The notes under the pieces: generated by a model
What the model was told of the DNA's origin: nothing
The model's input: only the letters and a program-made list of their open reading frames with translations
Databases searched by the model: none
Position numbers and translations under genes: made by a program
Assembly (NCBI RefSeq): GCF_040938485.1
Contig: NW_027272246.1
Location: 124,001 to 188,000 of the forward strand
DNA length: 64,000 nt
From: Diadema antillarum
Lineage: Eukaryota
Reading direction: 5' to 3'
Shown here: piece after piece, positions 28,154 through 30,275 of the stretch
How the letters are laid out: the number at the start of each line of letters is the position of its first letter
Position numbering within the stretch: position 1 is the stretch's first letter

Positions 28154-29368
28154 GTAGGTCCAGGGGCCCTGTTCGGTTATTTTACCTGGTTGCGCTTTCT
28201 TTTATTTGATATTTATTTGATACTTTGGCTTTGGACGGTGACAGCATACATCTTAGTGATGTTGTTGGTCTGTTGTCTGTAGACAGAGTGATGGTTTATA
28301 GCCATATCCATCCGGCTCTGCAGGCCTCGGATACGATACCATGCCCATGGTCCATACATCCGTATACCGTGGCGTGCATTTTAACGTTTCTTTAGTCCCA
28401 AACATTGTGTTTGATGTTAGTGGATAATCGAGGAGTTAGAATAGAAAAATATTTTACTGAAACGTTAATGCGGTTACTCTAAACAGCTATTGTCTCCCGT
28501 CTACGTTAATGTCAATGTGTCGTGCTAGTAATTGTTTTTTTTTTTTACTGCAGTATTGTAAACTTCGATCTCTTTTGACATTAATTATTTGACTCTGAAT
28601 TGTTTGTAAAGTTTAGACTAGAGACAGAGTCTTTGACTTTGTAAACAGAGAAAGCAGAAAGTGATGAAACTAGCATACACTAGAATTTGTCCGAGTATTT
28701 TTGAAAGTGCATCATTCTAAAGAATAAAATTTATGAAGAAGACTCAAGAAGATTAAAGACTGTTGTTCAATCAAAGTCTTGAATTAATCTAAGGTTACTC
28801 TCCACAGATGATGTGTGATTATTTAATACATCAGTCAATGATGTGTATTTTATTCCAATTGTGTAATGATTTTAATACACATGGGGTTAGTATAGTAGAT
28901 AGGTATGGGGTATTGATATCATGCCATCTCGATGATTAAGGCCAACCCATATAGAACCTACTCTGACTCTATCTGTAAGCTCTTCCTGCAGTCAGCAGCT
29001 ATGTGATGATATTGAGTGATACATTGTTGAATTTTTAGGTTCTTTTCTTTCCTGTTATTGTTTTTTCTTCATCTTTGTTTTTGTTTTGTTTTATATTTTA
29101 TTTGGCATTTGATTCCAATTCATGAATTGTTATGTACTGTGGTTATCTAAGGATAGGGTTTGCTGAAATTTACAGATTTTGCTGAAAATGACTAGACATA
29201 GTATGCATCTCTATTTTCTTTTTAATAAAAGAAGATATTCATACACTGCAGACTACATGTAGGATAGAGTTCTACTAGGCCTACACATTGCATATCAATT
29301 ATCATTAATGATGTAGCACTGATGTTGATTAATATTTGTCAATGCTTCTCTAATGTCATCATATGTCT

Positions 29369-30136
29369 CAGTTCGGGAAACCCACTCACAAGGGGGGCCC
29401 CTCCTTATAAGTAACCCGTCCCCCTTATAAGTAACCCCGTCCCCCTTATAAGTAACCCCCGGGGCACCCCTTATAAGGAGTCTCCACGCTTTTTTGCAAT
29501 GCAACGCGAAAATGAAAGGACTGCGGCAATTCGCTTGATTATGTCCATAAAGCTTCACAAGTTTCCTAGTTACTCACGAAATTTGAGCAAAATCGGTTTG
29601 AGGCATCATATCTAAAATCATGGATTTAAATGCGATGTCAAACGACCCATGCGAATGCGGAAGTGCGAGCGATTACTGGCGTGAGTGTCGCCAGGCGCGG
29701 CGGCGCGGCAATGCTTGACGCCTTGAGTGCAGACGTACGTGGCGACTGAGTACGAAAGTCTCCGTACTCAGTCGCCACGTCCGCACTCAAGCATTGCCGC
29801 GCCGCCGCGCCTGGCGACACTCACGCCAGTAATCGCTCGCATTTCAGCATTCGCATGGGTCGTTTGACATCGCATTTAAATCCATGATTTTAGATATGAT
29901 GCCTCAAACCGATTTTGCTCAAATTTCGTGAGTAACTAGGAAACTTGTGAAGCTTTATGGACATAATCAAGCGAATTGCCGCAGTCCTTTCATTTTCGCG
30001 CTGCATTGCAAAAAAGCGTGGAGACTCCTTATAAGGGGTGCCCCGGGGGTTACTTATAAGGGGGACGGGGTTACTTATAAGGGGGACGGGTTACTTATAA
30101 GGAGGGGCCCCCCTTGTGAGTGGGTTTCCCGAACTG
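29369..30136. mobile_element. Foldback (palindromic) transposon-like element, 768 bp
   Basis: Two ~380-bp near-identical inverted arms (CAGTTCGGGAAACCC... / ...GGGTTTCCCGAACTG) around an 8-nt loop (29755-29762). The left arm has extra 8- and 4-nt duplications. Subterminal tandem CCCCTTATAAGTAACCC repeats occur in both arms. 4-bp direct repeat GTCT at 29365-29368 and 30137-30140. Confidence 0.9.
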
Positions 30137-30275
30137 GTCTGCATTGTATGCAGGTACATTTTAGTGCGACGGTTGGTTCACATTTGAGCTCGGCTATGAA
30201 TTCTGAGTAAACCAGTTCACTATCCAAGCATCCACCATTTGACCAAGGGCACTTTTCATTCAACCGTGAGCCATC

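What the first reader, a model, noticed from the sequence alone, without database searches (positions are those of the whole stretch)
29345..30160. 768-bp foldback hairpin inserted between the predicted branch point and 3' splice site
Seen: removing the element and one GTCT copy gives ...CTTCTCTAATGTCATCATATGTCTGCATTGTATGCAG|G, with a CTAAT branch-point candidate (A at 29353) ~28 nt before the AG at 30152-30153, a canonical spacing. With the insertion, the two signals are ~800 nt apart but joined by an almost perfect ~380-bp stem. Inference: the element may be splicing-invisible because folding re-juxtaposes branch point and acceptor, a way for palindromic elements to colonise splice signals of essential genes. 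The same dsRNA would be a strong ADAR/Dicer substrate. CAGT termini with a 4-bp TSD do not match a superfamily I can assign; foldback elements with tandem subrepeats (TU family) are known from sea urchins.
Basis: partly seen in the sequence, partly recalled or inferred. Interest (0 to 1): 0.75.

Follow-up and report, generated by a model that had tools for sequence, protein, structure and literature searches.

The report
Foldback transposon upstream of mitochondrial MetRS
A real 768-base palindromic "jumping gene" sits about 140 bases in front of the start codon of a sea-urchin mitochondrial methionyl-tRNA synthetase gene, but nothing beyond chance-level motifs shows that it lies between a working branch point and splice acceptor, so it is best read as an ordinary foldback transposon insertion.

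Summary
Window 29369-30136 is a 768-bp near-perfect palindrome with CAGTTCGGG.../...CCCGAACTG ends. It carries 21-bp TTATAAG subrepeats in each arm and an exact GTCT duplication on both sides. It is a mobile family. Nine translated-arm matches in marine metagenome assemblies gave arms 85-93% identical, all ending at the same base, with 11 different flanks. Those flanks show A at +1 (11/11) and T at +4 (8/11), which fits a 4-bp ANNT target. A roughly 1.3-kb long form and a 127-bp mini form also exist. No transposase was found, and the superfamily is unassigned.

The splicing reading is not supported. The sequence downstream is the first coding exon of a bacterial/mitochondrial-type Met-tRNA synthetase (ATG at 30276). 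All three frames are closed between 30154 and that ATG, so AG 30152-30153 could at most be a 5'UTR acceptor. The same combination of YAG, yUnAy and an AG-free gap occurs 165 times in this window. The polypyrimidine tract is weak compared with the gene's real exon-2 acceptor. No RNA run was listed, so use of the acceptor could not be tested. The likeliest reading is a non-autonomous foldback transposon in the promoter-proximal or 5' region. Interest is low to moderate.

The parts
29365..29368 (.). left copy of the 4-bp target-site duplication GTCT
   Evidence: read directly; identical to 30137-30140
29369..30136 (.). 768-bp foldback (palindromic) non-autonomous transposon, ends CAGTTCGGGAAACCC... 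/ ...GGGTTTCCCGAACTG
   Evidence: the same terminus is found in 9 related copies
29369..29718 (.). left arm (outer 350 nt, 99% complementary to the right arm)
   Evidence: pair I1
29403..29477 (.). 21-bp tandem subrepeats (CCTTATAAGTAACCCCGTCCC, about 3 copies) in the left arm; the mirror array lies at 30028-30102
29719..29786 (.). centre of the palindrome: imperfect inner pairing with 8-nt and 4-nt indels, a 21-nt inner hairpin and an 8-nt loop
   Evidence: (I2, I7)
29787..30136 (.). right arm
   Evidence: pair I1
30137..30140 (.). right copy of the TSD GTCT
29349..29353 (+).
   Evidence: it fits yUnAy, but that combination is common in this window
30152..30153 (+).
   Evidence: no RNA data
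30154..30275 (+). non-coding stretch before the start codon (5'UTR and/or promoter); stops in all three frames; short uORF ATG at 30196
30276..30468 (+). first coding exon of the mitochondrial-type Met-tRNA synthetase: basic presequence-like N-terminus, ends ...PIFYVNS, donor CAG|GTATTT
   Evidence: the frame joins exon 2 in phase 1
31524..31714 (+). exon 2 of the same gene (PHIGH motif), with strong acceptor ctccccttcgtttttcctcaaaAG|
   Evidence: Pfam PF09334 E = 3e-17; PDB MetRS1-type matches E about 1e-12

Best explanation
Window 29369-30136 is a copy of a non-autonomous foldback DNA transposon. It is a MITE-sized element that is almost entirely two inverted arms, with 21-bp tandem subrepeats near each end. 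A transposase supplied in trans makes a 4-bp staggered cut and prefers ANNT targets. This copy inserted with a GTCT duplication 139 bp upstream of the start codon of a nuclear gene for a mitochondrial-type methionyl-tRNA synthetase. That places it in the promoter-proximal, 5'UTR or 5'UTR-intron region of the gene. It is most likely a tolerated, roughly neutral insertion into the 5' end of a gene. It is tolerated because it is either not transcribed (if the TSS lies downstream of it) or is removed with a 5'UTR intron. It was not selected for any splicing role. Shown here: the palindrome, the TSD, family membership and dispersal, the gene context, and the absence of coding capacity. Inferred: cut-and-paste mobilisation in trans, the ANNT preference, and neutrality.
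For: The palindrome and its fold are shown, and the TSD. For the family, the translated arm retrieved 9 ORFs from ENA marine metagenome assemblies. Their contigs L001-L006 and L071-L073 carry arms 85-93% identical. Every arm ends at ...CCCGAACTG, next to 11 different flanks. The flank logo has A at +1 in 11/11 (p about 2e-6) and T at +4 in 8/11 (p about 0.005). This symmetry is what a 4-bp palindromic target would give. Size variants exist: L003 has arms of about 650 nt, and L001 630-756 is a 127-bp mini copy. There is no coding capacity: the ORFs are at most 87 aa, are mirrored on both arms and have no Pfam match. The gene context rests on Pfam PF09334 on exon 2, best PDB matches to roughly 500-aa bacterial-type MetRS with cytoplasmic human MetRS only at E = 9e-4, and the exon 1 and exon 2 junctions read. 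The splice motifs are at chance level.
Against: No transcript data were available, so a real 5'UTR acceptor at 30153 cannot be excluded. The window's TSD (GTCT) departs from the ANNT preference at its first base. The only other copy with both ends, the L001 mini copy, has no matching flanks (CATT / AGTT). The 4-bp TSD therefore rests on one exact case plus the flank logo. No autonomous partner was found. Two unchecked notes from other windows of this genome report palindromes of 777 bp and 1.37 kb in first introns, the 777-bp one close to an acceptor. If they belong to this family, position near acceptors may not be random.
Confidence: 0.7

Rival explanations
1. The gene has a 5'UTR intron whose acceptor is AG 30152-30153 and whose branch point is A29353. 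The element landed between them, and its roughly 380-bp hairpin folds co-transcriptionally. [quoted passage not shown]
For: In the empty-site reconstruction, CTAAT lies 28 nt before a CAG|G with no AG in between. The stem begins exactly at the element's ends and is extremely stable. [quoted passage not shown] An exonic 5'UTR location would be harmful, so 'intron' is one of the two benign locations.
Against: There is no evidence for an upstream exon or for use of this AG. The motif combination occurs 165 times in the window. The pyrimidine tract is weak (61%) compared with the real exon-2 acceptor. The site precedes the first coding exon, so any of several downstream AGs (for example ttttAG at 30161-30162) would give the same protein, and the signal is under weak constraint. 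CTTAT motifs in the right-arm subrepeats could serve as alternative branch points. No RNA run was listed.
Confidence: 0.12
2. The element lies inside the transcribed 5'UTR exon (TSS upstream of 29369), so the mRNA carries a 768-nt hairpin that modulates translation or triggers editing or dicing.
For: Only that the TSS is unknown and the element is 139 nt from the ATG.
Against: A -770 kcal/mol stem in a 5'UTR would block scanning ribosomes (established knowledge). It would also be a target for dsRNA pathways, which is implausible for a single-copy housekeeping aminoacyl-tRNA synthetase gene with an otherwise intact reading frame.
Confidence: 0.05
3. The palindrome is an assembly or sequencing artefact (a foldback chimera).
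For: Perfect palindromes can arise from chimeric long reads.
Against: The palindrome ends at the same terminal base as independent copies from other assemblies and is flanked by a TSD. Its arms differ by 4 substitutions and 2 indels. A related copy assembled from short reads is also palindromic.
Confidence: 0.03

Closest known systems
Foldback transposons of sea urchin (TU elements, Strongylocentrotus purpuratus; cited as Liebermann et al. 1983 in PMC4079207)
   Same: Sea-urchin host. Almost the whole element consists of long inverted arms. There is an outer domain of short tandem subrepeats, a variable middle and no coding capacity. The copies vary in size in a modular way (768 bp, about 1.3 kb and 127 bp).
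   Different: No TU sequence was available, so homology is untested. The arms are much shorter than the TU arms of about 840 bp (also from memory).
Drosophila foldback elements (FB, Galileo, Tetris; PMC4079207)
   Same: The architecture matches: TIRs with tandem repeats, a middle domain without ORFs, and no autonomous partner at hand. Foldback structure is thought to arise independently in several superfamilies (PMC4079207).
   Different: Tetris makes 8-10-bp TSDs. This family makes 4 bp, so a different transposase superfamily is implied.
MITEs (miniature inverted-repeat elements)
   Same: Under 800 bp, with TIRs and a TSD, non-coding, dispersed, and often inserted in or near genes (PMC5199201).
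   Different: Typical MITEs have short TIRs and AT-rich bodies. Here the TIRs make up the entire element, and the ends are G+C-rich.
[quoted passage not shown]
   Same: [quoted passage not shown]
   Different: The yeast stems are tens of base pairs and lie in verified introns. Here the stem is about 380 bp, comes from a transposon, and the intron itself is unverified.

Membership tests
Foldback-type non-autonomous DNA transposon (structural class) | Inverted arms make up nearly the whole element | tested here: met
   Arms of 350 nt at 99% plus inner pairing; only an 8-nt loop is unpaired
Foldback-type non-autonomous DNA transposon (structural class) | Tandem subrepeats within the arms | tested here: met
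   21-bp unit, 2.8-3.4 copies per arm
Foldback-type non-autonomous DNA transposon (structural class) | Target-site duplication and dispersed copies with unrelated flanks | tested here: met
   GTCT on both sides; 11 other termini with different flanks
Foldback-type non-autonomous DNA transposon (structural class) | No transposase gene | tested here: met
   ORFs of at most 87 aa mirrored on both arms, no Pfam hit. The large ORF next to the L001 copy is a LINE reverse transcriptase, not part of the element
TU elements of S. purpuratus | Sequence homology to TU arms or subrepeats | not testable with these tools
   No TU sequence is in any collection reachable here
hAT superfamily (CAG... termini) | 8-bp TSD | tested here: not met
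   Only GTCT (4 bp) is duplicated: ATATGTCT on the left versus GTCTGCAT on the right
piggyBac / Kolobok | TTAA target duplication | tested here: not met
   The TSD is GTCT, and none of the family flanks (ANNT pattern) is TTAA
Superfamilies with 4-bp TSDs (Sola, Ginger, Chapaev/CMC, some Academ; list from memory) | 4-bp TSD | tested here: met
   and the symmetric A(+1)/T(+4) flank logo
Superfamilies with 4-bp TSDs (Sola, Ginger, Chapaev/CMC, some Academ; list from memory) | Autonomous partner with matching termini and a diagnostic transposase | not testable with these tools
   No eukaryotic genome DNA search was available. The defining papers are not held
[quoted passage not shown] | The AG is a used acceptor and the upstream A is the mapped branch point | not testable with these tools
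   No RNA run listed. The exon-1 ORF is absent from the protein collections
[quoted passage not shown] | A stable stem spans the interval between the two signals | tested here: met
   In silico only: the stem pairs 29369 with 30136

The most novel reading that the evidence does not exclude
The gene has a 5'UTR intron ending at AG 30153, and the foldback element sits between its branch point and acceptor. It is tolerated only because its hairpin loops itself out. [quoted passage not shown]
Probability: 0.1. Interest if true: 0.6.

Novelty: new member of a known kind. Interest (0 to 1): 0.25.

Why it matters
As it stands, this is a clean, young-looking example of a foldback transposon family in a sea urchin. 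It adds a 4-bp ANNT target signature that could help assign the family to a transposase superfamily, and it sits at the 5' end of a housekeeping gene. It would matter more if transcript data showed that it lies inside the interval between branch point and acceptor. That would be an animal example of a very long transposon-derived stem acting like the yeast 'downstream stems', and it would show how palindromic elements can insert into splice-signal intervals without harm. A near-perfect 768-bp palindrome is also a potential fragile site next to an essential gene.

Tried and rejected

2. Exon-1 ORF. It is not on record as an exact product and has no word-sharing homologue, so no other haplotype or orthologous locus was obtained and no empty allele could be sought.

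3. JGI metagenome scans. A 24-mer of the right flank and 5'UTR gave nothing. A 17-mer of the terminus gave 64 loci, none of which aligns to the element, so they are chance matches.

4. Possible transposase. The 634-aa ORF beside the L001 copy is a LINE-type reverse transcriptase.

5. Rfam. Only sub-threshold hairpin look-alikes were found (MIR9672 at 54.6 bits against a gathering score of 74; isrG), which are not meaningful.

6. Superfamily assignment from the literature. Bao et al. 2009 and Yuan & Wessler 2011 are not held. The papers that are held give no TSD or terminus table that fits.

7. Earlier notes of this scan. None exist for this window, and the sequence look-up was blank.

For that reason the full-length annotated protein, and any transcript contigs encoding it, could not be retrieved. 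The large representative-protein search was not used, because the protein's identity was not in doubt.

9. Assembly artefact. Rejected; see the rival explanations.

Full report
**Observation**

The sequence is as described. Window 29369-30136 is a 768-bp palindrome. Its outer arms (29369-29718 and 29787-30136) are 350 nt and 99% complementary, and a further imperfectly paired inner part ends in a 21-nt hairpin with an 8-nt loop. A global comparison of the two halves gives 368 matches, 4 mismatches and two small indels (8 and 4 nt) near the centre. As RNA the stretch folds into one continuous stem of -770 kcal/mol, against -255 +/- 6 for shuffles (z = -83).

Each arm carries about three 21-bp tandem subrepeats containing TTATAAG. 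The element starts CAGTTCGGGAAACCC and ends GGGTTTCCCGAACTG. GTCT is present immediately outside both ends, at 29365-29368 and 30137-30140. It is the only copy in the window.

**The element belongs to a mobile family**

I translated the right arm by reference and used it as a proxy probe. This retrieved nine short ORFs from ENA marine metagenome assemblies, several of them from Tara Oceans. The contigs fetched for eight of them (L001-L006, L071-L073) carry arms 85-93% identical to the window copy.

- Every arm ends at the same base, ...CCCGAACTG (one copy has ...CTC).
- The 11 termini abut 11 different sequences.
- The first flanking base is A in 11 of 11 (p about 2e-6 at the window's base composition).
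- The fourth flanking base is T in 8 of 11 (p about 0.005), while positions 5-8 show nothing.

A signal at +1 and its complement at +4 is what a palindromic 4-bp target (ANNT) cut with a 4-nt stagger would leave. This supports the 4-bp TSD independently of the window's GTCT, which departs from the preference at its first base.

The family has size variants. L003 is palindromic about position 354, with arms of about 650 nt, which implies a form of about 1.3 kb. The window copy aligns with only the outer 370 nt or so of that arm, so it looks like a derivative that has lost the centre. L001 630-756 is a 127-bp mini copy made of the two subrepeat domains only; its flanks do not match each other.

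None of the copies encodes anything recognisable. The window's ORFs are at most 87 aa, mirrored on both arms and without a Pfam match. The 634-aa ORF next to the L001 copy is a LINE reverse transcriptase outside the element. The element is therefore a non-autonomous foldback transposon. Its transposase is unknown.

**Gene context**

The ORF at 30276 begins with a basic, presequence-like peptide and ends ...[13 protein letters not shown] at a CAG|GTATTT donor (30468/30469). It joins in phase 1 to an exon starting at 31524, behind a strong acceptor (ctccccttcgtttttcctcaaaAG). That exon encodes (V)PHIGHLYS... and matches Pfam tRNA-synt_1g (PF09334, E = 3e-17). Its best solved relatives are bacterial-type MetRS of about 500 aa (E about 1e-12), whereas human cytoplasmic MetRS scores only E = 9e-4. 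Further MetRS-like exon ORFs lie at about 34.5 kb and 41.0 kb.

The gene is therefore a nuclear gene for a mitochondrial-type methionyl-tRNA synthetase, and 30276-30468 is its first coding exon. The 'mitochondrial' label is an inference from the presequence and the enzyme type. Between 30154 and the ATG all three frames contain stops. The next gene upstream is a GPCR on the opposite strand whose start codon is at about 21354. The element therefore sits in the divergent 5' region, 139 bp from the MetRS start codon.

**The splicing claim**

I rebuilt the empty site in a script and confirmed the geometry: the A of CTAAT lies 28 nt before the AG, there is no AG in between, and 61% of the 18 nt before the AG are pyrimidines. 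The same criteria are met by 165 AGs on the two strands of this window, about 1.3 per kb. The motif evidence is therefore at chance level.

Three further points weaken the claim:

- The candidate's tract is much weaker than that of the gene's real exon-2 acceptor.
- A second candidate, ttttAG at 30161-30162, lies 9 nt downstream, and CAG|GTACAT also resembles a weak donor.
- The region is non-coding, so several AGs would give the same protein, and an exact signal is under little constraint.

The mechanism itself is not new in principle. [quoted passage not shown]

The direct test was not possible. No RNA run was listed for the stretch, which also ruled out laying reads. The exon-1 ORF is absent from the protein collections, and a flank 24-mer is absent from the JGI metagenomes. 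The full-length protein, and any transcript contig encoding it, therefore could not be looked up. I did not use the large representative search, since the protein's identity was not open.

**Most likely explanation**

My estimate is about 0.7 that this is a foldback transposon inserted into the 5' end of a housekeeping gene and tolerated because it is not part of the mature mRNA. Either the TSS lies downstream of it, or it is removed with a 5'UTR intron. DNA transposons and MITEs commonly land in or near the 5' ends of genes (general knowledge; MITE gene-proximity is noted in PMC5199201).

- An exonic 5'UTR location is unlikely (about 0.05), because a -770 kcal/mol stem would block scanning.
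- An assembly artefact is unlikely (about 0.03), given the family-defined termini, the TSD, the differences between the arms and the independently assembled palindromic relative.

**Comparison with known elements**

The architecture is that of foldback elements known from sea urchin (TU), Drosophila (FB, Galileo, Tetris) and plants (PMC4079207). Tetris makes 8-10-bp TSDs. hAT, whose ends also begin CAG, makes 8 bp, and piggyBac and Kolobok duplicate TTAA. All three features were tested here and are not met.

A 4-bp TSD is shared with Sola, Ginger, Chapaev and some Academ elements. That list comes from memory, and the defining papers are not held. Membership cannot be tested without an autonomous copy. 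I therefore file this as a new member of a known structural kind, with the superfamily open.

**Leads from earlier notes (unchecked)**

Other windows of this genome hold a 6.77-kb foldback element with an 8-bp TSD, a 1.37-kb palindrome in THOC3 intron 1, and a 777-bp palindrome in an intron 1, 89 nt from an acceptor. The last two match the sizes of the long and short forms found here and should be compared with this family. Other agents name the genome as Diadema antillarum. I did not verify this.

Noticed in passing
L001:630-756: A 127-bp mini copy of the family made only of the two terminal subrepeat domains. Its flanks (CATT / AGTT) do not form a TSD. It lies 76 bp from the end of a full-size arm, so the area holds clustered insertions.
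   Followed up: partly
L003:1-1009 (also L004): Long form of the family: palindromic about position 354 with arms of about 650 nt (about 1.3 kb in total). A second copy's terminus starts 48 bp after the first ends. L001 and L003 share the spacer ATGTTACAGTGTTTCACAGCATAGACAT, which suggests insertions into another repeat.
   Followed up: partly
L001:942-2846 (-): A 634-aa ORF with reverse-transcriptase motifs of a non-LTR (LINE) retrotransposon, adjacent to the foldback copy in a marine metagenome contig.
   Followed up: no
window 18936-21354 (-) and 60964-62310 (+): Rhodopsin-like GPCR ORFs. A two-exon gene lies head-to-head with the MetRS gene, and a 448-aa single-exon GPCR lies downstream.
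   Followed up: no
window 31830-31945 and about 31990-32060: Tandem 12-bp repeats (reading PTDR/DRPP in translation) inside MetRS intron 2. This intron region also holds repeated ORF-like segments resembling each other (32100-32600), probably another repeat family.
   Followed up: no
window about 8570-8770 and about 36270-36640: Runs of N (gaps or masked). They were left untouched and are not near the finding.
   Followed up: no
window 30196-30210: A short upstream ORF (ATG AAT TCT GAG TAA) lies between the element and the MetRS start codon. It is relevant only if this stretch is in the 5'UTR.
   Followed up: no
window 29681-29824: A sub-threshold Rfam match to a plant miRNA precursor model (MIR9672, 54.6 bits against a gathering score of 74) on both strands. 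It reflects the central hairpin only.
   Followed up: yes
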